Below, in pieces: positions 113 through 59,672 of a stretch of 64,000 nt of DNA; the stretch's first letter is position 1; every line of letters begins with the position of its first letter. Position numbers and translations under genes: made by a program. The notes below the pieces were generated by a model. It did no database searches, was not told the origin of the DNA, and saw only the letters and a list, made by a program, of their open reading frames with translations. This DNA is from Ascidiella aspersa. Lineage: Eukaryota. Location: positions 14,384,001-14,448,000 of the forward strand of contig OZ004607.1 of the NCBI GenBank assembly GCA_963924565.1, in the 5' to 3' direction.

Positions 113-2450
113 CCAACATCCATGAGTATAACCTTCGATTGAGTGACATATCTCGCCGCAAGAGACATTGTATGGCAGCCACAAGTAATATGCAGCAATC
201 TTCTTTAGGGAATGGGATGTTTGAGAGAGGACAAAGCAAAATAAGTACATCAAAAGATGCTCGTTGGGTGAGTACACTAGAATCCTGGAAAGCCTCACAT
301 AAGGCACGAACCTGTAAGAAAACAATTCAAAAAATGTATTATGGCATTTATCAAAATTTATTTAACTATATTATTTAAACAATTTATATATTTTGTTGAC
401 CACATTGTTTTATCCCTGACAGTAATTAATTTGTTGAATAAGAAAGTTTTAAGTCTTACGTTACACTTTATAACCTAAAACCAAAAAATCAACTTTATGA
501 CAGAACCACTTCGAATAGTATATCACTTCATTCATTGTAAGCAAGTAGAGAGCAAGACCTACCATAACATTAATATCAGAACCAATGAGGTAGATTTGAT
601 CTTCTGTTGAACGCTTTTTGTTAAAATTTCTTAAAATAAATTGAACAGCAGCCAGCCTTGCAACTGACCCAATAAGTACACAACGCCACATTGCACTAAA
701 AAAATCCATCTCGCCAACTTCTGAAGACAGCTTTTGTAGGAGGGAATCAACTCGCTCAAAATATTCTGTTCCTTCTTCTAACCCTAAAAAAAACTTAATT
801 TATTGCTATGAATTCATCTGTTTTTCGACATACTCATATGCTCCAGGAAGTGTTCTTTTTTTAAAAAGCAAGTGTTGTTTGTATTTATTTAAATATTTGA
901 AGTTTTAATGTCTGAGTAAAGATTGACAGTGTAATATATATATTTATCAGTGGTGCTAAAAATGTTAAAAATTTAATGCAAATGGTTTAGCAAATTGTAT
1001 CGAAAATATGGATGATTGTTTTTATATTTGACTTACCAGGTAGCAAACCCATTAGTATCCCATCAATGCAGACATTTAAAGATCCTCCCAAAGGCAGTAT
1101 GTGAGTTTCATAAAGGTTCAACAAAACAGGACGAACTTGCATAGAAGCGTTTGCAAAGAGAGGAAACAATCCAGTGCTAAAAACAAAAAATATTTTGGAA
1201 ACCAACTTTTATAAATTAAATAAACTCTGTCATTAAAGTTTTCACACCTATACACATATAGCTCTGTTTGAAGTCTCTTTTTCTGAATGATGTTAAAAAT
1301 GGTATCATAGACCTGGAGAGCTTTGAGATGCACCCCTCCTGGCAGAGCTGGATGCATACATTGTGCCAAACGCTTTCCAACAGTTATCTTCTTTGGGATA
1401 GCTTTATATTTGGGATTTAAAACCTGAACAAAGAAAAACACTTTCTTGGAAAAAATCATGTAATACATTAGTACTATTTTATCAATATTGTGTTTTATGC
1501 TGCACTTGCAGATCTCATAGTTTGCTAATTAATACAAAATATATATATATGCTTACATGAATTTTGTTACACTTAAAAAGGAAACTAAACTGAAAATCAC
1601 TTTTCGTTTATACTGTTAAAGTTGGATTTTTGGTTTATGTGGTTATTAAGGCTGGTTCACACTAGACGCGTCTAGCGTTAACGTAAAGCGTTTTTAAAAA
1701 TGCTTTCGGTTGCGGAAAAGTTGAAATATTTCAACTTTGACGCTTTCGGTTAGAAGCGAGGAAATTTGCCGTTAACGCTGGCAACGCGTTATGTGTGAAC
1801 TGGACGACGTTAGCCGTTAGACGCCAGACGTTAACGCGTCTAATGTGAAACAGCCTTTAGACCTTTTTTGGCCGTATGGGAACAGAGTGGTACATTTATG
1901 TTTTAGGAGAAGGTTCTGGTCCGTTTAAAAATCTTTCAAGTGTGCTTGCCATACTTATGACGATAGTAAATTTTTGCCTAGGCTTTGACTAGCCAGCTAC
2001 GTAATCTTAAATAAAACAGATTGTTAGAAAATAAATAGTGCAAGCTGAAATACCAAATAAGCCGAATTTCTCTTCAAGATAAATTAAGTATGTAACAAAA
2101 CACGCAAGAAAAACAAACATTTTATTTGCGTAAAGTGATAAAATTACATTTAAGGTGATTCCAAATTATTAAACTTGCCTAAAGTGTAACTTTATTTTAA
2201 CTTAGGAAAGACATAAAATTGCTAAACAAGCTTGCCTTTCAATAAAAAAAGTATTGGTTTACTTAAAACAGCAAAAGGAAAAAACGCATAAAATAGCAAT
2301 ATAAATTACCTTATTGAGTTTGCCAAGAGCCGCAATTAAGTCAGCCCATTCACTTGACGACTCAAAGTTTCTTAAGGCCTTGTCTACAGCATTCATGTAC
2401 TGTCGGTATTTAGGGTCATCCAATAGCGAAGTATCTTGAACAGAAAACAT
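113..2450 (-). CDS. DOP1: Protein dopey / DOP1 family, 5' part only (gene continues beyond position 1)
   Basis: Exons 2310-2450, 1248-1423, 1037-1176, 563-783 and 113-311 join in frame. Translation [47 protein letters not shown]...[20 protein letters not shown]...GLLPGLEEG...[18 protein letters not shown] is the Dopey N-terminal domain. The fifth donor appears to be GC. Confidence 0.96.
1650..1855. mobile_element. Palindromic MITE (PIF/Harbinger-like) in DOP1 intron 1
   Basis: Imperfect terminal inverted repeats GGCTGGTTCACACTAGACGCG ... CGCGTCTAATGTGAAACAGCC with internal AACGC/GCGTT symmetry. Flanks are taa/ttt(a), consistent with a TWA-type target. Confidence 0.75.
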
Positions 2451-16700: not shown

Positions 16701-18064
16701 TGAATATGTAGTGTGCATCAATATTTGGCGACTTGGTTTGCTTCAGTGACAAACATGGAGAGTAAAATTTTGTCGAGGAGTTGTGACTATCCTTTAAAAC
16801 AGTTATAAAAGTATCAACAGCAAGCTAAAATATATTAAATTTTAAATGACAATAAATGTAAGAATTAATCCTATAATATTGCCCCACTATTTACCGATTA
16901 CTAAATTATTGTTTAAATGGCTATATTAAAGCTGTGATAGACAAAGGATAACAAAATAAGTTAGTTTCGAGTTAAGGACTATTTGAAATCTTACAATATA
17001 ATATTGTGGGTAAAATTAAATTTTAAGCCGACAAAATGCGATTTACTGGTTTAGCAATCATAACCCTGAAGGAAAAGCTTTAAACTGTAAATCCATATTC
17101 TTCTGTAAATCTATATTTCGTTGCCTCATGCTACTTTGTTGAATTAAATTCTGTTCGGACATCCTAATTTAATTTGCTCTGAATCTCTTCTTTTATTTAA
17201 CGCTGTACATGACTTTTTGTTAGCTTCTTGTATATTTTGATGTAAATTCTTCTATAGTGTCCAATAATGAGTCATTACGTGTTGTTCCTTAAAATCGTTT
17301 GTTCTTCGTTATAATGGTGTCGCGACAAAAGGGGTTCTTCAGTCGTAAGACTGCCACCTGATTGTCGTTAAATCAAAAAAAAAATGTAAATTTAGTCGTT
17401 AATTACTGAGTTGTGAGTCGTTAATTTAGTGAGTTTCTTTGGTTTAATATATCTGCTTTGATTAAGACTTGTGTAGGCCTACACGAATTTGTGTTTGTCT
17501 TTCAAAGCTAAAATGCTGATGGCTTTACTGTACTTGCATAATCAAACTGCGCGCACAACGGCGTGTAAGTTGCATAAGCATCTCAAAATCTTGAATGGCA
17601 TGCTGTTACAGTGGTCTATTATATCGTAGTATACAGTAACAACAGCACGGCAAATAACACACTGACAAATTGACGTCACACAATGTTGACACATCAATAC
17701 AGATAATTCGGCAAGACGGATAGCTCAGATAAGGTCTCAAACTACAACCCTTTCAGGTGCAGTTCAGGAAATTAGCGAAAAAAGGTGCAATAAATAAGAA
17801 AAGTGAAACTTAAAAAAAAATGAACATGCAACTGTACGAACAAATAATTAGGATGTGCAAAAATATAAAAGAATACTTCTCATGTTGAAGCAGTCTAGTT
17901 GTAAATAAACAAGACTGCAGAGTTAAGCGGCAGGTGCAAAACGATTTAACCACGAGGCGGCAGTGTGGTGCTTAGTACGCATTTTCTTTAGCGGAAACAA
18001 TTTTTGAAGACAACACCGTGGTAACAAGAAAGATACAAAAACGCAAGCGTATCGACTTGCTTTA

Positions 18065-20220
18065 TTACGTTCGAATGCTATTTACGTGAGCACACGCTTG
18101 CTTGACCTGGCCGTCAATTTCGTATAAATCGTGAAGCATTCGCCGCTCGCTTAAATGTACTTGTGTATACGCAAAATAATCGTTGTTAAGATCGCAGCTG
18201 TCGTCGAAAGGTCTGTACAGCCGATTCATCTGCAAAATAAAGTAACCAGTTAAGTTTCAAGCTTTGACCTTTTTAAAATTATATGTATAATATACATCCA
18301 AAAAAAGCTTAAATGCAGCAATTGGAGAGCGGGTTGACATAAAAGGTTTTTTCGCCGAATGATTTCAGTTTGCGTTTTTCTGACTCATAGTACCTAAAAT
18401 TTTGATACATATAATCTGTGGCGCAAGTCAATTTACTCTGATTTATTCTCGTACTAAGAACAACGAAAGATGCTCACCTCTTGCTGTAAGACGTTGGTGA
18501 TGGAGTGAAGGGAAACGGCGACGTCCGACCGATTGTCGGCGAAAATGTGCGGTGTCGCTCGCACGTAGCAGAGCATGTCGCGGTACTTTGCCAGCACGTG
18601 CGAGATGATGTCTCCCCAGGTACGTTGCGAATTGACGCGCGATATTGCCGTTCTTTTACGCATTCTCTCGTGCCCTTCGCTCTGTAAATGAAGAAGCGAC
18701 GTTAAAGCAATGCTTTGACCATCATGCCCAGTTTGGGGTGCGCTACGTATGGTTGTAGCATTACAAAACGTGTGTACGCTGAGTGGCTAACGATTTAAAC
18801 TTACCGCCATTCTGAAGGTGTGGTGATTCAGATGCGCCAACTTTTGCACAATGACCTCGCAGGAAGCCGTAGAGCGCTTTGTTTTAAGACCGGCCAATCG
18901 CTGGCCGAACGTTAATCTTGAAAGTGAACTTTTTCCTTCCTCCTGCTTCCAACCGTTGCTGTCCAGGTCGCGAAAGAGTGCAACTGGTAATCTTTGCACG
19001 TCCTCAGATTGTTGCGCATTGGGTAGAAAGAGGTTGATGTGTTTCAAAGGTATAGCCCGCGACGTTACGATATTGATAGTAAGGATCACAGAAACTGAAA
19101 ATAAAAACAAAGGAAAAATGGTTATTATACGGTTTTACAAGTTAAAAGTTTAATTAGGAAAATTCTTAAATCCGATTAATTATTCGGAATTATGCCATGC
19201 ACGACAACAAAACGCAATTCCTGTCAGCGTGAGATGTTTGCTCTATCTAACCTGTACGGACTACTGCCAAACCCATTACTGAAATGTCAGTCAGCGAACA
19301 AGCCGCTTGGCCTAATGATATGATTTATTCGTGTGTGATTACCGAGATCATGCGGCTGATAAGGAAGCAGGCGACCCTCCCTTAGAGTGCATCCCGGCGC
19401 TTAAACTTTCATCTGGCTTGCAAGTAATTAGGAATGGCGCTACAGTCGTATATCTGTCTTCCGACAGCGGTATCCACACCCATATCGTTGACAGTGTTCA
19501 AAAAGTTCACAACCTTTGTGTTTCATAACATGCGATCGCGTGACGTGCCACCTTGGCGCACAATTCTGCTGTTCCTCGCCTCGCTTTCTTTGGTCGTTGA
19601 GTCACGATCGCAGGATTACGGCGACGGGTTAGTTTATCAAACGTCAATCTACTTCTAACACAGGTTTTCGCACATTCGTCTCGCAAAGATTGCGCACGAA
19701 ATCCGATACATCATAATTATTTTTAACGGCAATGAAAGCCCAATTTAGGTGAGCCACTAATGCCAGAATCATTGGGCAGCCTTAATGAGCGCGAACGATT
19801 AATGTTCCAGGAACTGGTTTTATATTGAAATCAAACATCACGTTTTTGCTCAAATAATGTAATCTACAATAACAACCCTAGGCCTAACTGAATTTTACGA
19901 CACCACTAATGTGTTACGCTTCCAAGAAATCGAAACCCGTTCAAATGACACGTTTCAAACTCGAAATTACAGTTAAGCATTTTGGGTGCCTCACCTATTT
20001 TGAAGAAAATCGGTGTCCCGCTGATGAAACTCCGCATGTTTTGAAGTAATAAAGTCGGCCCTTGCAAAGTCTTTTGAGTGTCACAGTGTTGAAGCGCTTC
20101 CGTTGATACACGTTTTGTTTCCTTTGCTACTTTTTTGCCTTTTTGTTTTTCTTCTTTATTGTCCAACATTTGGGAGGATTTCGGTGACATTTTGTATCGG
20201 CAACTGCTTGGAATTTTCAT
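18065..20220 (-). CDS. Orphan secreted/furin-processed protein; candidate IL-6/IL-11/G-CSF-like four-helix-bundle cytokine precursor
   Basis: Exons 19995-20220 (alternative Met at 20037), optional 27-nt exon 19252-19278 (Met at 19276), 18805-19094, 18478-18681, 18065-18229. All are GT-AG with phases 1,(1),0,0. Hydrophobic segment IFFKIVSVILTINIVTS, prodomain, KTKR/S cleavage site and a 145-aa amphipathic helical domain with 4 Cys. The gene model is well supported; the family call is inference. Confidence 0.8.
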
Positions 20221-22174
20221 AGTTTTGCTGTAGGTATGATGTTGAAATTGCGAGTCAGCTAATATGGAGCAAAACACTCTTTTGTTTAAACTCGACGCCG
20301 AAGCAGATTTGTCTATTAAGCAGCTGCAAAATTCTTATTACAAAGTTTTTCTTTGTTATGATCTGTAAAAAACAAACATCAAGTTACACTTTTTACCACT
20401 TAAATAATTTCGTTGCTGAGCTTGCTATTCGTTGAAGTTTGCGGCGTTTCCGCGAATACGAAATTCCTCTTCTCCAAGTCAACAGATTACGCTACATGTC
20501 GCATCCTACTGTCGGTTAATGGATAGGCTACGCTTCCATTGCCGCACAACGTGTGACACGGCTAAAGGCAGAAATCGAAGTTTTATATTAGCGAAAAAAA
20601 GTCGTCGGCTCTTGTTTTGCGAAGGTTACGAAACTTGCGCATCTACCGAAGTTACATAACACTTGCCCGTAGCTAAATAACGCTACATTTTTCAGTTCGC
20701 CGCACGACAGGCAGGTAGATACATATCGCTTGTATCGAGGTCGTCTCAGCTGACCAGTACGCCATTACATATTCATTAAGGACCGGTCTTGAGTATTTAT
20801 AAAGATCTTCGTCAGATGATTTTTCTGCCGGCGAACATTTTCTTTTTTCTGGTTCTGCCGGTTCAAGGATACAACGGGATTTTTCAAAGGGGGATTATAC
20901 TATTTTAAGTGGCACGTGCCCTTCGGTCTTGAAGCCACATATCGTGCCTGTGATTCTTCATTGTCATTGACCATGATTGCGCATTTGACAAAAATTCGTT
21001 CTTTTAAGATGTGAACTCTGCGCTCGGGTTCAACAAGTCGATAAAATATTGTATATGCTGTAGTTGGTTAATTACAATTACCAGGAAAAGTTATTATTAT
21101 CATTTCGTGATAGCAACGGTATATATATTGTATGCGGTGTTTATCAACAACTATCCTCATTAACTTTAATCTACAAACTTTTGTGGGAAAATGATTGTAT
21201 AAATAAAATATGTGAAAATGGCAAGTCCTTCGTCAAGATGACAGTAATCTGCAATTTACAAAAAAACATTTCGTGAACTGCTGGACACGGGCTGGCCCAT
21301 ACTTTTCTGATAATTCGATTTATACTTTGCTAGACTTACATCTTCTCAAAACCTTGTCAAATATGTATGTCGTTCAAAATCGTATTTCTTACCTTTCGGT
21401 GTTAAAATAGTAGTAAATAAATATTGCTTACTTTTTTGAGAAAAACAACCTGCAAAATCTTCTTCTACAAGTTTAAATTTAACGTTTACTTTACTTAAAA
21501 AACATTTATACAAACTTAATAAATAAACCCAATAATTTCAACCTTTATTTACTCCTGTAATACGCTACTCTTCATTTGTTTTCTTTTTGCAGTGGCATGT
21601 CAAATATTTCAGTTGAGTGAACGTATTTCATGACGTCATCTTGACTCGTTTGTTTACTAACAGTTTGAGTCCACACGTTGCAGCACAAACAAGCAAACAC
21701 TTACAAAAATCAGGTGGGTTGAGATGGGCTGTATGTAGTTAACAAAAGTTATATGCTTTTAGTGTAAGCTTTCTATGTATTTCAATGTGTAAGCTTTCTA
21801 TGTATTTCAATAAATTTACTGACTATTTTATAACATTTACCGTTAAAGGATGAGTTCGATTTTTAAAGGGTTTCATTGCAGTGAATTTCTCAGAAGCTAC
21901 TACTGAGTTTTAAGTGGATGCAATTGCTAAGTAATTTTTTGTTTAAAACCGGATACAAGAGTAGCAAGGGATGCTTGACCTCAGGTTGGGAGAATGTGGA
22001 ACGAATAATTGATCGCGGCCTAAATGTAATTCAGCGTTCGGTATGGATGCAAACGATCGGGCGATATAAAGGTCATGGCACCTCGAGCAACCCAAACAGG
22101 AATTTCAGTTTACGTCGCAGTTAACGCGCCTTATTGTAAAACTAGAGCAAAGCTTGTAGAGCGCATTCTCTGAA
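19805..22174. promoter_or_regulatory. Cluster of STAT/GAS motifs, TATA box, kB-like and CRE sites around the 5' end of the cytokine-like gene
   Basis: TTCCAGGAA 19805-19813, TTCCAAGAA 19920-19928, TTCCGCGAA 20448-20456, TTCTCAGAA 21887-21895, TTCTCTGAA 22166-22174. Minus-strand TATAAATA 20794-20801. GGGATTTTTC 20876-20885. TGACGTCA 21631-21638. Confidence 0.45.
21762..21811. repeat. Tandem duplication, 25 bp x2
   Basis: GTGTAAGCTTTCTATGTATTTCAAT twice. Confidence 0.9.
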
Positions 22175-28875: not shown

Positions 28876-31800
28876 TTACTGTTTTGAACGGTGGGAGGAA
28901 TACGGTGCTCGACGGCGTATCTCCTGGCCCAACTGATCTTTAAGTGTGGAAACCTGAAACAAATGAAAGCGATTAAATCTCGGAAATGTTTTGTAAATCT
29001 CGTTTCTTGATTATGTAAGCCGAACTTGTGTAGTAAGTAATGACAACTTTTAAATTGATGGAGCACAAAACTCGACCGTATACCTGTTCTTCTAGTCCCT
29101 TCACCCTTTGTCTGTGCGCCCTCTCGCGCGCCTCTAGTGTACGCTCGGTCTGCAGTTGTGCGGTTCGCAGACGCTCCATCTCCAGTTCTGATTCCTGTCG
29201 GTGCCTTGAGGTAACCTCGATCAAGCGCTTCGCGTTCCCTTGTTCTGAGTCTGCGAGTTGCGCTTGAAGTGCCTGAAAACACATTAGGTGTATTTTTAGT
29301 GCGTATACATTTAGTATTTTTTTCTTTAAAAGTTGTTACAACGACCATACAAATAAGCCGAAATTTGGCGACTAAATACTGTACATACCGAAGTGTTTTA
29401 CATATACGATAAACGGTCAAAGTTTCGACCATAATACGACTTACAAAACCTGTTCCAACATGTAAAAATTATCTGGGAAACACGCATTATAAAGCCACAT
29501 ACCTGGATCGTTGAACGTGCATCCTCTAATTCACTTTCGGTATCCCGCAGAGATCTGTTCAGGTGGCCCTTGTTTTCCGCCAGCCGAATCGATTCCTCTT
29601 CGTTCCTCAAACGCTCACGTTCGACCTGTGTGGTTTCGCATGTAAACTTCGACAGCCGTTCGACATTCTATTTAGCGTTCACACATGCATTACCTTATCC
29701 AACGTCTTCTGCAAGGCTGACTTGTCCTTCTCGAGACGCACGGCTCCGCGCTGAGTTTCCCTCTTCTCTGAGTCCAGTTGCGCGATAGCCCTTTGTAAGC
29801 CGGTAATGCGCTCCTGAAGTATTCTCTTCTCCTCTTGCAGCTTCTGTATGCGCTCCAAGCTGGTCGCCTCGGTTTCTTGATGTTGAGTGAGCATCTGCCA
29901 CGATAAATCAGCCGGGTTAAAGCTCATTTATCAACGTCTACATGTGGTCGGAAGGCTTGACAGATGGCTCTACCTGCTGTAAGCTCTTTAATTGGTTTTC
30001 CACTTCTGACTTTCGCACTTCGGCGTCCTCGATGTCGTGCGTGATATTCTGCACTCTTTCTTGCAGCGCGGAGTTTTGCTTTTTCAAATCGGCAACCGCT
30101 TGTCTGGCAGCCTGCAGTCGTTCCTGCAAAAAAGTATGTGCCACGCGATCAATTACAACAAACGACTTGCGGCTTGCGGCGCTGTACCTGTCGGATGTAT
30201 TTGTTTTTACGCACCTGTAATACACGACGGTCGTGTTCAGAAGCTGTAAGCATCTTCTGGAGCTGGCTTATTTTCTCGTTCAAGGAATTTGTCGTGGCAT
30301 CCTTTTCGGACATGGACATTGAGAGCGATTGGACCTGTTCAGGAAATTTACGTAAGAGTAACACCTGTATTGCGGCAAGAATTGTCCGAATAATAGTTTA
30401 ATATTAACGGCGCTTACCTTGTCTTTAAGATGGCTTTCGCCTTCTTCGGTCTTGGCAAGTGCGGTACTTAATCTGTCGATAGTAAGCTGCAAGGAAGTGC
30501 ATTTGCCCTCCAAGTCTTGTATCTGACTTGTTAGATTGTTAATGCGCTCCTGTTGAACCTATAACAACAACGTTATGGTTAAATCACATGTCTATAATAG
30601 TATTATTAGCTATTACAAGACACAAAGTTATTGTAACATTAACCTGATTAGCAGTTTCTCGGTCGTTGATCGAGAGTTTGCTTCTCTGCAGATCACCCTC
30701 AAAGGCACGTCTTGCCAGTTCAAGCTTGGTGGCTCTCTGTTCAGACATGTCGAATGCCTCTTTCAACTTGCGTTTGTCAGCCTCCAGTTTGGCCTGCTGC
30801 GCTTTCATTTTGTTGATTTTGTCCTTTGAAAAAGTTTAGATTTTACATTTTACAAATATTGCTTTTCGTGGCTATCCAGGAAAAAAAATTTTTAAACACA
30901 TTACGTATGCCCACTAAAACTTTTAATCTTCATGTTTTTGTGGAAATAGAAAAATGCTGCAATCGTATATAAAACTAGTTTTAACCTGAATGAGTTGACG
31001 TAATCCTTTTTTTTTCAAAATTACATTGTTCTATTGTCGGGCCTGGGTCTATAACGCAGCATTAATTACAAGGGCTACAGACCACAATGTACACAAATAA
31101 TAGTTATTCACCTGTAGGGATCGTCGCTCGCTCTCCGAGTTCTGTTGTGCTCGCTCAAGTTGAGCCAGTTTCTCAGCCATTCCCTTTTGTTCTCTCTCGT
31201 TTCTCCTGATTGTCTCCTCCTGGAGCATGAGAGCGGTCTGCGCGGATGCGAGTCTTCCGTGCGCTCCACGTTTTCCCTCTTCCGCCTCGCCGAGCGACTT
31301 TTGCAGTTGCTGCAGACGCTGGTTAACACGGTCACGATCCGCTTCCATCTCCATAAGCTAAAAAGGAAATTGGTTGAACTCCCATGTTGCTTATATTGTC
31401 AGGATTTAGCAGAGGCAATGGGTGACTTTAAGTCAAGATGAGGTAGAGTGGATCATACATATTTGTGTCAGGTGAGCTTTGGTATGGCATGGCTCACATC
31501 ATCTTCAATCTAACCACGTTACACTGGTGCTATGGTGTTAATGGAAGTAGCCAATTTACGTAGCTATACCTGTCGTGTAAGGTTGGAGACTTCGATTTTA
31601 GCGTCGTCCTTCTCGCGCTGCGTGTCCTTTAGCTCCTGAACGAAGTCTCGCAACGATGCTCGAACCACTTCCGGGTCAATATCTTGCACTAGCTGCTCGG
31701 TGCGACTTGGGGAAAATTAGGTTGTAAACAACACAGTGTACACAGCAACATAATCGGATTATTGTAAACTTACGTCGGCGAGCCAGATCTGCGCATGCTT

Positions 31801-58301: not shown

Positions 58302-59672
58302 TCATATCAAAACGGTTTTCTGTGTATGATAAATTTCCTTCTTGTCTTGAGAGATGAGGAACAGCACGGCGGCGGTAAGAATGAAGCAGAATGCAGCCCA
58401 CGCCACCCCGTAGCCCCAGCCGAACCAGAAGAAGGCGAAGAAGGGCAAGATTTGCAGGAACATGATCGGGAACAGGATAACAGCCACCAAAACGCAGATA
58501 GCTGCGCGAATAATAAAGAATTTGCCGTTGGGAATGCATTGCGTATCTTTATACTTCTGGCAAATGAAATACATGTTTAACTTCTTCGCTATACTAAATA
58601 GAATTTTTAAATTTAGGTTAAATTTCATACAAAACAATTGTGTTACAAAGCCTCTGTCAAGTGTATTAACATACATCAACACGCCTTTAGGGAGGTAAAT
58701 AATAACCAACACTAAATTTTGAAAACTATACTATTTTTTCTCTTTTGGCGGGAGGGGGGGTTGATATAAACTTTGATATGACCTAAAGAACCTTGTTGTA
58801 ACAAATGTTACCAATAAAAATATCAAAACAACATTTAAAAGGTGCGCAATATTGTTTGTCGTCGTCGATCTGAAAACAACCTACCAGCAACGATAAGAAT
58901 AATAGCAGCAATTTTGTACATGACTCTCCATTCTCTCTTGCAGTATGCGACCAGTCCCAGGATGAAAGCAATGACAGTTGCAATGAAAGGTATAACAATC
59001 AGTGCTTGAACAATCGACATGTAAACTGTAAAACATATTAAAGCAAGCCATTAACGCTAATTAAAGGGATTAATAAAGTGGATTCTTGCGTTTTGTTTCA
59101 CACTATTCTATATCCTTCTGTAGCACATCCAGTGTATACATTTTGGCTAGGGGCGTGTGACATTTTTCTAAGCATGCTGCAAAATGACGAAATCTGAACG
59201 TCATTGATATAATTAGTGGAAACAGAACATTTAAGTTACTGATATGACATATTTAACGTTTGTTATCATTTTGCAGTTTATTCCCGAATGTCAATAAAAA
59301 TTAAAGAATTGCTAATTTATGTTAGTATTAAAGGTATTTCCCCGTGTAACAGTCGGTTTGTGCTAGGCAGATAGAAAACTCAACAATTGTTTATTCTATT
59401 GTTTATTCACCTCCACGCAGCACGGCATCGCGGCATACCCACTCCGACACAGTTTGAGGACTCTGCTCCACTATGTCACCCGGCGGCGGAGTTTTTTTGC
59501 ACTCGGTCCAAAGGCTCATGTAGAATTGAAAATCGTCGGCACGGTCGCTTACAACCCAATCTTTGAGAGCCATCGAAATTATGAAGCAAATGATCCCGCA
59601 CAGTAAATTCGCCAAACCGATTAACTTCAGCGGCCGCAGCCACGATATTTCGATCACCAACTCTTTAGCCAT
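58302..59672 (-). CDS. TMEM47: TMEM47/PERP/VAB-9-like PMP22-claudin family tetraspan, 200 aa
   Basis: Exons 59411-59672, 58885-59025 and 58302-58501 (phases 1,1). LRPLKLIGL...DW...YMSLWTECKK...WVC first loop (W-LW-C-C signature), four TM helices, and the FGWGYGVAW motif typical of TMEM47/PERP. Confidence 0.88.

What the first reader, a model, noticed from the sequence alone, without database searches (positions are those of the whole stretch)
18065..20220. Candidate invertebrate-chordate IL-6/IL-11/G-CSF-type helical cytokine split across short ORFs
Seen in sequence: the spliced product is a leader, a prodomain, KTKR, then STASCEVIVQKLAHLNHHTFRMA|SEGHERMRKRT-AISRVNSQRT-WGDIISHVLAKYRDMLCYVRAT-PHIFADN-RSDVAVSLHSITNVLQQE|MNRLY-RPFDDSCDLNNDYFAYTQVHLS-ERRMLHDLYEIDGQVKQACAHVNSIRT (145 aa). 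This reads as four amphipathic helices with a short BC loop and a long CD loop. Compared with family sequences recalled from memory, helix B I-SHV-L-AK-Y-RDM-L-CY-V follows the IL-6 pattern I-ITG-L-LE-F-EVY-L-EY-L. The helix C end QQE|MNRL resembles G-CSF WQQMEEL and IL-11 LLMSRL, with a phase-0 intron at that point. Helix D MLHDLYEI parallels IL-6 ILRSFKEF. A phase-1 intron in the leader followed by phase-0 introns is the usual class I helical cytokine gene layout. The Cys positions allow an N-terminal/C-terminal bond (as in EPO) and a helix B/CD-loop bond. Invertebrate chordates have JAK, STAT and gp130-like receptors, but their ligands diverge too fast for simple sequence searches, so this could be an unrecognised ligand (inference). 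Caveat: the AB loop is short for a long-chain cytokine.
Basis: partly seen in the sequence, partly recalled or inferred. Interest (0 to 1): 0.9.

Follow-up and report, generated by a model that had tools for sequence, protein, structure and literature searches.

The report
Orphan secreted helical protein gene
A small four-exon gene in a probable sea-squirt genome most likely encodes a secreted or membrane-anchored, all-helical protein with no known relatives; it might be a missing cytokine, but the fold test that would decide this could not be run here.

Summary
On the minus strand, four open frames are joined by strong GT-AG sites in compatible phases (1, 0, 0). They encode a hydrophobic leader, about 73 prodomain residues, KTKR, and a 145-aa four-Cys domain. 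The stop codon overlaps an AATAAA. The leader exon ends at 19995.

The gene looks real. A control with this locus's own thresholds found no such three-exon chain in 150 random windows. Exons B-D show codon-position GC bias like neighbouring known exons. Each exon is single copy in the 308-Mb genome. The middle exon has one reciprocal homologue (P0006, 30% identity) among 1.84 billion representatives, and it ends at the same exon boundary.

The cytokine reading is neither confirmed nor refuted. No exon matches any Pfam family or PDB sequence. AlphaFold2 on single exons gives helices: pLDDT 73 for exon C, 56 for exon D. The inferred 21-8-21 linker pattern allows an up-up-down-down bundle, but the Cys spacing is not the IL-6/G-CSF pattern. 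A prodomain, and a possible 63-residue tail that would give a type II anchor, are also atypical.

The scan had already noted this stretch (s1-802353).

The parts
19995..20220 (-). Exon A (leader exon). Candidate starts are ATG 20220 (long form, 294 aa), 20190, 20169 and 20037 (short form, 233 aa). It ends in the first part of the hydrophobic segment.
   Evidence: donor ATAG|GTGAGG with GT at 19994-19993, phase 1; the open frame is 142 codons (20334-19909), top 0.13% of frames in the window. P(no stop) over the 61 codons between the two ATGs is about 0.03. That mildly favours a coding N-terminal extension.
20323..20364 (-). Two strong acceptor-like sites upstream of the first ATG: T-rich tract + ACAG|AT at 20364/20362 and TTTTGCAG|CT at 20325/20323. 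They may be a cis- or trans-splice acceptor of the 5' UTR.
   Evidence: Read. No ATG lies between these sites and 20220, and there is an in-frame stop at 20337-20335. That they serve as acceptors is inference only.
18805..19094 (-). Exon B. It holds the rest of the hydrophobic segment (SVILTINIVTS, then SRA|IP), the prodomain, KTKR and the first 23 residues of the mature domain (start of helix A, first Cys).
   Evidence: the acceptor has 13 of 15 pyrimidines, and the donor GCG|GTAAGT scores 5 of 7. GC 0.46-0.50 against 0.33-0.37 in the flanks; single copy in the genome.
18874..18885 (-). KTKR, a dibasic proprotein-convertase-type site at the prodomain/mature-domain boundary.
   Evidence: Sequence, (exon B residues 70-73). 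P4 is Lys rather than Arg, so it is a KR-type site and not a canonical furin RXXR. Cleavage is inferred.
18478..18681 (-). Exon C, mature residues 24-91: a basic helix (with RMRKR at 18652-18666), helix B with the second Cys (18568-18570), a short linker and helix C.
   Evidence: AlphaFold2 pLDDT 73, with helices at 2-18, 22-42, 44-47 and 51-67. GC3 0.71 against GC2 0.43; single copy in the genome.
18478..18636 (-). The part of exon C that is conserved in the only detectable homologue, P0006.
   Evidence: E 6.4e-4 against 1.84 billion representatives; pairwise 47 bits, E 3e-14, 16 of 53 residues identical, no gaps. P0006 hits only this exon in the 308-Mb genome (E 1.3e-7). W, G, SH, Y, DM, CY, P, F and the final QE are invariant. 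In both sequences QE is followed by V, which is the read-through of a GT donor.
18065..18229 (-). Exon D, mature residues 92-145 plus the stop: end of helix C, a loop of about 21 residues with the third Cys (18194-18196), and helix D with the fourth Cys (18092-18094).
   Evidence: acceptor TTTTGCAG|ATG, phase 0. AlphaFold2 pLDDT 56 (low), coil at 1-25 and helices at 26-39 and 42-53. This is the least supported exon; a 63-codon open frame is only in the top 3%.
18061..18066 (-). AATAAA polyadenylation signal overlapping the TAA stop, followed by a T/GT-rich stretch.
   Evidence: ('after stop' string). Its function is inferred.

Best explanation
This is a real, so far unannotated, lineage-restricted protein-coding gene of a probable sea squirt. 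It has four coding exons on the minus strand.

Proposed mechanism (inferred from the anatomy):
- The product enters the secretory pathway through a hydrophobic segment that spans the exon A/B junction.
- If translation starts at MRSFIS, that segment is a cleavable signal peptide with a c-region like TSRA|IP.
- If translation starts at the first ATG (MKIPSS), the segment is a type II signal anchor behind a basic cytoplasmic tail of about 63 residues.
- A prodomain or stalk of about 73 residues is removed at KTKR by a proprotein convertase.
- This releases a 145-residue, mostly helical domain held by two disulfides. The likely pairs are Cys5-Cys137 and Cys61-Cys103.
- The released domain acts outside the cell, most likely as a signalling ligand.

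Its family is unassigned, and a four-helix cytokine-like fold is one open possibility.

Shown here: the exon structure, single-copy status, coding-like composition, one cross-species homologue of the middle exon, and helical predictions for exons C and D. Inferred: secretion, cleavage, disulfide pairing and ligand function.
For: - Splice sites, phases, stop and polyA signal were read directly.
- Chain control: only this locus in the real window, and 0 of 150 random windows.
- The open frames are unusually long.
- GC is raised in exons B and C, and GC1>GC2<GC3 as in neighbouring known exons.
- Each exon is single copy in the genome, so this is not a repeat.
- The reciprocal homologue P0006 conserves the hydrophobic stripe, the Cys, the Trp and the exon end.
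- Exon C is predicted helical at pLDDT 73. Exon D is predicted as a loop plus helix.
- A separate terminal exon of the upstream coiled-coil gene ends near 28879, so this is its own unit.
Against:
- No full-length or spliced protein of this gene or a relative exists among about 15 billion database proteins. Only one 67-aa genomic ORF was found. So expression is unproven, and exons A, B and D have no comparative support.
- The exon D model has low confidence.
- No signal-peptide predictor was available, and the hydrophobic segment has a Lys in its middle.
- KTKR lacks the P4 Arg of a classic furin site.
- The splice thresholds in the chance control were taken from the locus itself.
Confidence: 0.55

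Rival explanations
1. The mature domain is a class I four-helix-bundle cytokine. This is the first reader's idea, though the Cys layout is closer to EPO/TPO than to IL-6/G-CSF. It would be a ligand of the orphan gp130-like or CLF-3-like receptor of tunicates and would signal through JAK/STAT.
For: - Helical predictions.
- The inferred linkers of about 21, 8 and 21 residues fit up-up-down-down connectivity.
- Cys5 and Cys137 could tie the start of helix A to the end of helix D, as in EPO/TPO (my knowledge).
- STAT genes are present in this genome.
- Ciona has two class I receptors (PMC1963337).
- IL-6-family and leptin ligands have not been identified in tunicates, lancelets or cyclostomes (PMC12284397).
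Against: - No sequence match to any cytokine family or structure.
- The IL-6/G-CSF disulfide signature is absent.
- In the exon C model only 3 residues separate the preceding helix from helix B, so the 'AB loop' would itself have to be a helix.
- A prodomain with a convertase site and a possible type II anchor are unknown in this family.
- gp130-type domain models found nothing exon-wise in this genome, though that is inconclusive.
- Fold searches with the exon C fragment gave only generic helical hairpins.
Confidence: 0.12
2. The mature domain is a class II (IL-10/interferon-like) helical cytokine that pairs with the class II cytokine receptor-like genes of this genome.
For: - About six predicted helical segments.
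- Four Cys whose first three positions (5, 61, 103) resemble IL-10's 12, 62 and 108 (from memory, untested).
- The genome has exons over the Pfam cut-offs for Tissue_fac and Interfer-bind. One lies 1.8 Mb away on the same contig.
- Lancelet and lamprey IFN homologues were found only through gene structure and fold (bioRxiv 10.64898/2026.05.30.728932).
Against: - Intron phases are 1-0-0 in four exons, not the 0-0-0-0 in five exons used to define IFN-like genes in that preprint.
- No Pfam IL10, interferon, IL22 or IL28 match.
- That preprint's fold screen of the annotated Styela clava proteome found no IFN-like secreted protein. An unannotated gene would have been missed, however.
- The receptor-domain hits are only just above the cut-offs.
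Confidence: 0.05
3. It is a prohormone or neuropeptide-type precursor. It would be cut at both basic sites (KTKR and RMRKR) into smaller peptides, and there would be no single folded 145-aa domain.
For: Two basic clusters sit 30 residues apart. The signal peptide plus spacer layout is typical of such precursors.
Against: - RMRKR lies inside a predicted helix.
- Cutting there would split the four Cys 1+3.
- In P0006 the conserved part behaves like a helical core, with i, i+4, i+7 hydrophobic positions, and not like short peptide repeats.
Confidence: 0.08
4. It is not a functional independent gene. It could be a chance ORF chain, a decaying pseudogene, or exons of a larger or different transcript.
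For: - No RNA evidence and no annotated protein in any database.
- Thresholds in the chance control are post hoc. My rough estimate still allows some tens of chance chains genome-wide.
- Exon A could also be entered from upstream through the acceptor at 20325/20323.
Against: - Protein-level conservation of exon C with the same exon end in another species.
- Coding-type GC position bias.
- A stop codon fused to AATAAA.
- The upstream coiled-coil gene seems to end at about 28879.
Confidence: 0.15

Closest known systems
Erythropoietin/thrombopoietin (class I long-chain helical cytokines)
   Same: A secreted helical domain of about 150-165 residues. One Cys sits near the start of the first helix and one near the C-terminal end, so they could tie the two ends together as in EPO/TPO. 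The connections between helices are long-short-long (inferred).
   Different: No detectable sequence similarity. EPO and TPO have no convertase-cleaved prodomain and no type II anchor. The fold here is unverified.
IL-6/G-CSF/IL-11 family (Pfam PF00489 and relatives)
   Same: Secreted and helical. The exon order (leader; helix A; helices B-C; loop plus helix D) is broadly similar.
   Different: No profile match in the gene or anywhere in the genome. The two short-range disulfide loops of IL-6/G-CSF are absent. The mature domain is shorter (145 aa), and the turn before helix B is only 3 residues.
IL-10/interferon class II cytokines, including the lancelet and lamprey IFN homologues found by gene structure plus fold (bioRxiv 10.64898/2026.05.30.728932)
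   Same: A small secreted helical protein of about 200 aa with four Cys and several helices. It lies in a genome that carries class II receptor-like exons. Like those homologues, it would be invisible to sequence searches.
   Different: Intron phases are 1-0-0 in four exons against 0-0-0-0 in five. It has a prodomain. The fold is untested.
Type II membrane ligands shed by furin-type convertases (EDA, BAFF, APRIL of the TNF superfamily)
   Same: If the first ATG is used, the architecture matches: a basic cytoplasmic tail, a signal anchor, a stalk with a basic cleavage site, and a C-terminal receptor-binding-size domain of about 145 aa.
   Different: The C-terminal domain is predicted helical, not a beta jelly-roll. 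No TNF Pfam match.
Drosophila Unpaired (Upd) ligands
   Same: Invertebrate JAK/STAT ligands that have no recognisable sequence similarity to vertebrate cytokines. They are a precedent for hidden helical ligands (my knowledge).
   Different: Upd proteins are much larger and are not known to be made as convertase-cleaved proproteins. No similarity was tested or found here.

Membership tests
Class I helical cytokines, IL-6/G-CSF/IL-11 type | Significant match to a family profile (Pfam IL6 PF00489, or LIF_OSM, CNTF, IL11, EPO_TPO, Hormone_1, Leptin) | tested here: not met
   hmmscan of each exon against Pfam-A at E<=10 found no cytokine family. The PF00489 search of the whole genome gave a best E of 3.6, at another locus. 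phmmer and hmmsearch against PDB sequences at E<=10 found no cytokine. Exons had to be searched separately, which lowers sensitivity.
Class I helical cytokines, IL-6/G-CSF/IL-11 type | Up-up-down-down four-helix bundle with long AB and CD crossover connections | tested here: inconclusive
   Only single exons could be folded. Exon C gave helices at 2-18, 22-42 and 51-67 (pLDDT 73). Exon D gave coil at 1-25 then a helix (pLDDT 56). The linker lengths (about 21, 8, 21) permit the topology only if the basic helix serves as the AB crossover. The joined domain was not folded (operator rule). Fragment fold searches were uninformative.
Class I helical cytokines, IL-6/G-CSF/IL-11 type | Family disulfide signature: two short-range loops, as in IL-6 Cys44-50 and 73-83 or G-CSF 36-42 and 64-74 (my knowledge) | tested here: not met
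   The four Cys lie at mature positions 5, 61, 103 and 137, with spacings of 56, 42 and 34.
Class I helical cytokines, IL-6/G-CSF/IL-11 type | Secretory leader directly followed by the mature cytokine | tested here: not met
   A hydrophobic leader is present by inspection. It is followed by about 73 non-helical-bundle residues and a KTKR site before the domain. A further 63-residue N-terminal extension is open in frame.
Class I helical cytokines, IL-6/G-CSF/IL-11 type | Binding to a class I cytokine receptor and JAK/STAT activation | not testable with these tools
   STAT_bind exons are present in the genome. IL6Ra-bind and Lep_receptor_Ig models found nothing exon-wise. The tool warns that this does not show absence.
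Class II helical cytokines (IL-10/interferon) | Five exons with intron phases 0-0-0-0, the criterion used in bioRxiv 10.64898/2026.05.30.728932 | tested here: not met
   There are four coding exons with phases 1-0-0.
Class II helical cytokines (IL-10/interferon) | Profile match (Pfam IL10, Interferon, IL22, IL28A) or the six-helix IL-10/IFN fold | tested here: inconclusive
   No Pfam match. The fold of the joined domain was not predicted.
Convertase-processed secreted proproteins (general kind) | N-terminal hydrophobic leader plus a dibasic or multibasic site between the prodomain and a Cys-containing mature domain | tested here: met
   Read from the sequence: the hydrophobic segment across the A/B junction, KTKR at 18874-18885, and an even number of Cys in the mature part. 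Actual cleavage was not tested.

The most novel reading that the evidence does not exclude
The 145-residue domain is a true four-helix-bundle cytokine (class I or class II). It would be the first identified in a tunicate and the missing ligand for one of the orphan cytokine receptors of invertebrate chordates. Unusually, it would be made as a proprotein, or as a type II membrane protein, and released by a proprotein convertase.
Probability: 0.15. Interest if true: 0.85.

Novelty: new member of a known kind. Interest (0 to 1): 0.42.

Why it matters
Class I receptors have been described in Ciona (PMC1963337), and this genome carries STAT genes and class II receptor-like exons. Yet no helical cytokine ligand has been identified in tunicates (PMC12284397; bioRxiv 10.64898/2026.05.30.728932).

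This gene appears to be missing from public protein sets. Proteome-based fold screens would therefore have skipped it.

If the joined domain folds as a cytokine bundle, it gives a concrete candidate to test against those receptors. It would also date helical-cytokine signalling in chordates more precisely.

If it does not, it is still a clean example of an unannotated, fast-evolving secreted protein gene with a convertase-released helical domain.

Tried and rejected
- Known family by sequence: Pfam on all four exons at E<=10 gave only a noise hit (rva_4, 13 bits against a 26-bit cut-off). PDB sequence searches gave nothing, or noise-level DNA-ligase rows.
- The ESM Atlas gave no usable hit for exon C, and sub-threshold bacterial aminopeptidase fragments for exon D.
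- The five top hits of the 1.84-billion-protein search (P0001-P0005) are long multi-stretch or tandem-repeat proteins whose scores add up over repeats. They are not relatives.
- Word-indexed protein searches with exon C, the A1 profile and exon B found nothing new. The metagenome locus scan also found nothing.
- Repeat or transposon origin is rejected, because every exon and the intron patch are single copy.
- An RNA gene in the locus is rejected: no Rfam match at E<=1.
- A TNF-like reading, suggested by the type II plus basic-site architecture, is rejected because the domain is predicted helical.
- The idea that these are 3' exons of the upstream coiled-coil (rootletin-like) gene is judged unlikely. 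That gene has its own apparent terminal exon and stop near 28879.
- Hydrophobic-moment profiles of single exons were equivocal and are not used.
Full report
**What is there**

- Exon A is open from an upstream stop at 20337-20335. It holds four in-frame ATGs (20220, 20190, 20169, 20037) and ends at 19995 with the donor ATAG|GTGAGG, phase 1. The exon A end was worked out here; the finding gave only the overall span.
- Exon B (19094-18805) follows a pyrimidine-rich acceptor and ends GCG|GTAAGT.
- Exon C (18681-18478) runs from TTTACAG| to GAG|GTGAGC.
- Exon D (18229-18065) starts after TTTTGCAG| and ends in a TAA that overlaps an AATAAA. A T/GT-rich stretch follows.
- The introns are 899, 123 and 248 bases long, in phases 1, 0 and 0.

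The product has these parts:
- a hydrophobic segment spanning the A/B junction;
- about 73 further residues;
- KTKR;
- a 145-residue part (23+68+54) with Cys at positions 5, 61, 103 and 137, one N-glycosylation sequon (NRS), and a second basic cluster, RMRKR.

The precursor is 233 aa from MRSFIS and 294 aa from MKIPSS.

**Is it more than chance?**

- The open frames that hold exons A-D are 142, 115, 110 and 63 codons. Among 7125 stop-to-stop frames in the window, those are the top 0.13%, 0.4%, 0.4% and 3%.
- I scanned for three-exon chains using donor, acceptor and length thresholds set at the values of this locus. This locus was the only chain on either strand of the real window. None appeared in 150 second-order Markov random windows. 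The thresholds are post hoc. My rough extrapolation, which is not a tool result, still allows some tens of chance chains across a 308-Mb genome. This control alone is therefore not proof.
- GC rises to 0.48-0.55 over exons B and C, against 0.30-0.37 around them.
- Exons B-D have GC1>GC2<GC3. So do the Dopey_N and coiled-coil exons elsewhere in the window.
- Every exon is single copy in the genome.

**Comparative evidence**

Exon C was scored against 1.84 billion representative proteins.

- Five hits are long tandem-repeat or multi-stretch proteins whose scores add up over repeats. They are artefacts.
- The sixth, P0006, is a 67-aa ORF from a single 1144-base Logan contig. It aligns without gaps over 53 residues at 30% identity (pairwise 47 bits, E 3e-14).
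- Invariant residues are R-T-W-G, S-H, Y, D-M, C-Y, P, F and the terminal Q-E. Hydrophobic positions are kept at i, i+4, i+7 spacing in both helices.
- In both sequences Q-E is followed by V and then unrelated residues up to a stop. That is what reading through a GT donor looks like, so the exon end appears conserved (inference).
- Searched back against the whole 308-Mb genome, P0006 finds only this exon (E 1.3e-7).
- No closer relatives turned up, no full-length spliced protein, and no same-species entry.

Exon C is therefore very likely a real coding exon under protein-level constraint. Exons A, B and D have no comparative support. The gene seems to be absent from public protein sets.

**Transcripts**

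The junctions and the 5' end are therefore untested.

**Host and neighbourhood**

- The genome has a cellulose-synthase match over the Pfam cut-off. In an animal genome that points to a tunicate. Other notes of this scan also call it a sea squirt (unchecked).
- The gene sits in a gap of about 27 kb between two other minus-strand genes.
- One is a coiled-coil, rootletin-like gene whose apparent last exon ends in a stop near 28879.
- The other is a Dopey gene whose N-terminal exon is at 1121-1468.

**Family tests**

- No exon matches any Pfam family at E<=10, apart from a noise hit.
- No exon matches any PDB sequence at E<=10, apart from noise-level ligase rows.
- The Pfam IL6 model finds nothing in the genome.
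- The IL-6/G-CSF disulfide signature is absent.
- A prodomain with a convertase-type site is not a feature of class I cytokines.
- The 61 codons between the first ATG and MRSFIS are stop-free (P about 0.03). No ATG lies between two strong upstream acceptor-like sites and 20220. The first-ATG product would be a type II membrane protein with a basic cytoplasmic tail of about 63 residues. That architecture recalls furin-shed TNF-family ligands, not cytokines of this class.

**Structure**

The joined protein was neither folded nor searched. That is the main gap of this report.

- AlphaFold2 on exon C, aligned with P0006, gives pLDDT 73 and helices at 2-18, 22-42, 44-47 and 51-67.
- Exon D alone gives pLDDT 56, coil at 1-25 and helices at 26-39 and 42-53.
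- Exon B was not folded. Taken with the helix-prone end of exon B (by eye), this suggests the following layout in mature numbering:
  - helix A at about 5-23;
  - a basic helix at 25-41;
  - helix B at 45-65;
  - helix C at about 74-95;
  - a 21-residue loop;
  - helix D at 117-144.
- The connections A-B, B-C and C-D are then about 21, 8 and 21 residues. This long-short-long pattern is what an up-up-down-down bundle requires, provided the basic helix acts as the crossover.
- Cys5 and Cys137 would lie at the same end of helices A and D, as in EPO/TPO.
- All of this is inference from fragments. The same data fit a plain helical bundle.
- Fold searches with the exon C fragment returned only generic hairpins.

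**Context for the cytokine idea**

- Ciona has a gp130-like and a CLF-3-like class I receptor (PMC1963337).
- IL-6-family and leptin ligands have not been identified outside jawed vertebrates (PMC12284397).
- This genome has STAT exons.
- It also has exons just over the cut-offs for the class II receptor domains Tissue_fac and Interfer-bind. One lies 1.8 Mb away on the same contig.
- A 2026 preprint found lancelet and lamprey interferon homologues through intron phases plus fold. It found none in the annotated Styela clava proteome. An unannotated gene like this one would have been missed.
- The present gene does not meet that preprint's 0-0-0-0 five-exon criterion.

**Verdict**

- The best-supported reading is a real, lineage-restricted gene for a convertase-processed, disulfide-stabilised helical extracellular protein, probably a ligand (confidence about 0.55).
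- I put roughly 0.12 on a class I cytokine and 0.05 on a class II cytokine. I put 0.08 on a multi-cut prohormone.
- I put 0.15 on 'not a functional independent gene'.
- The cytokine assignment cannot be decided with what could be run. One fold prediction of the joined domain and one look at RNA reads would settle most of it.

Noticed in passing
window 19200-19700 (inside intron 1 of the gene): A single-copy patch with GC 0.47-0.49, in an intron that otherwise runs at 0.33-0.37. It has no Rfam match and no frame-compatible exon that I could find. It could be a regulatory element or an unrecognised exon or antisense unit.
   Followed up: partly
window 28879-30808, minus strand: A run of coiled-coil exons (rootletin-like). 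The apparent terminal exon ends in a stop near 28879, about 8.5 kb upstream of the candidate gene.
   Followed up: partly
window 1121-1468, minus strand: An exon encoding the N-terminal domain of a Dopey (DOP1) protein (Pfam Dopey_N, E 1.3e-20).
   Followed up: partly
G000:C1:16248436-16248600, C7:10318294-10318419, C8:22781747-24523594: Exons just over the Pfam cut-offs for the class II cytokine receptor domains Tissue_fac and Interfer-bind. They include a cluster of three equal-scoring matches on contig 8. Ligands for such receptors are unknown in tunicates.
   Followed up: no
G000:C5:19610700-19611167: A cellulose synthase family match (27.5 bits, over the cut-off) inside a 647-codon open frame. 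This is consistent with the tunicate-specific animal cellulose synthase.
   Followed up: no
window 58305-58712, minus strand: A 136-aa open frame with a weak, below-cut-off resemblance to the PMP-22/claudin family (E 0.007).
   Followed up: no
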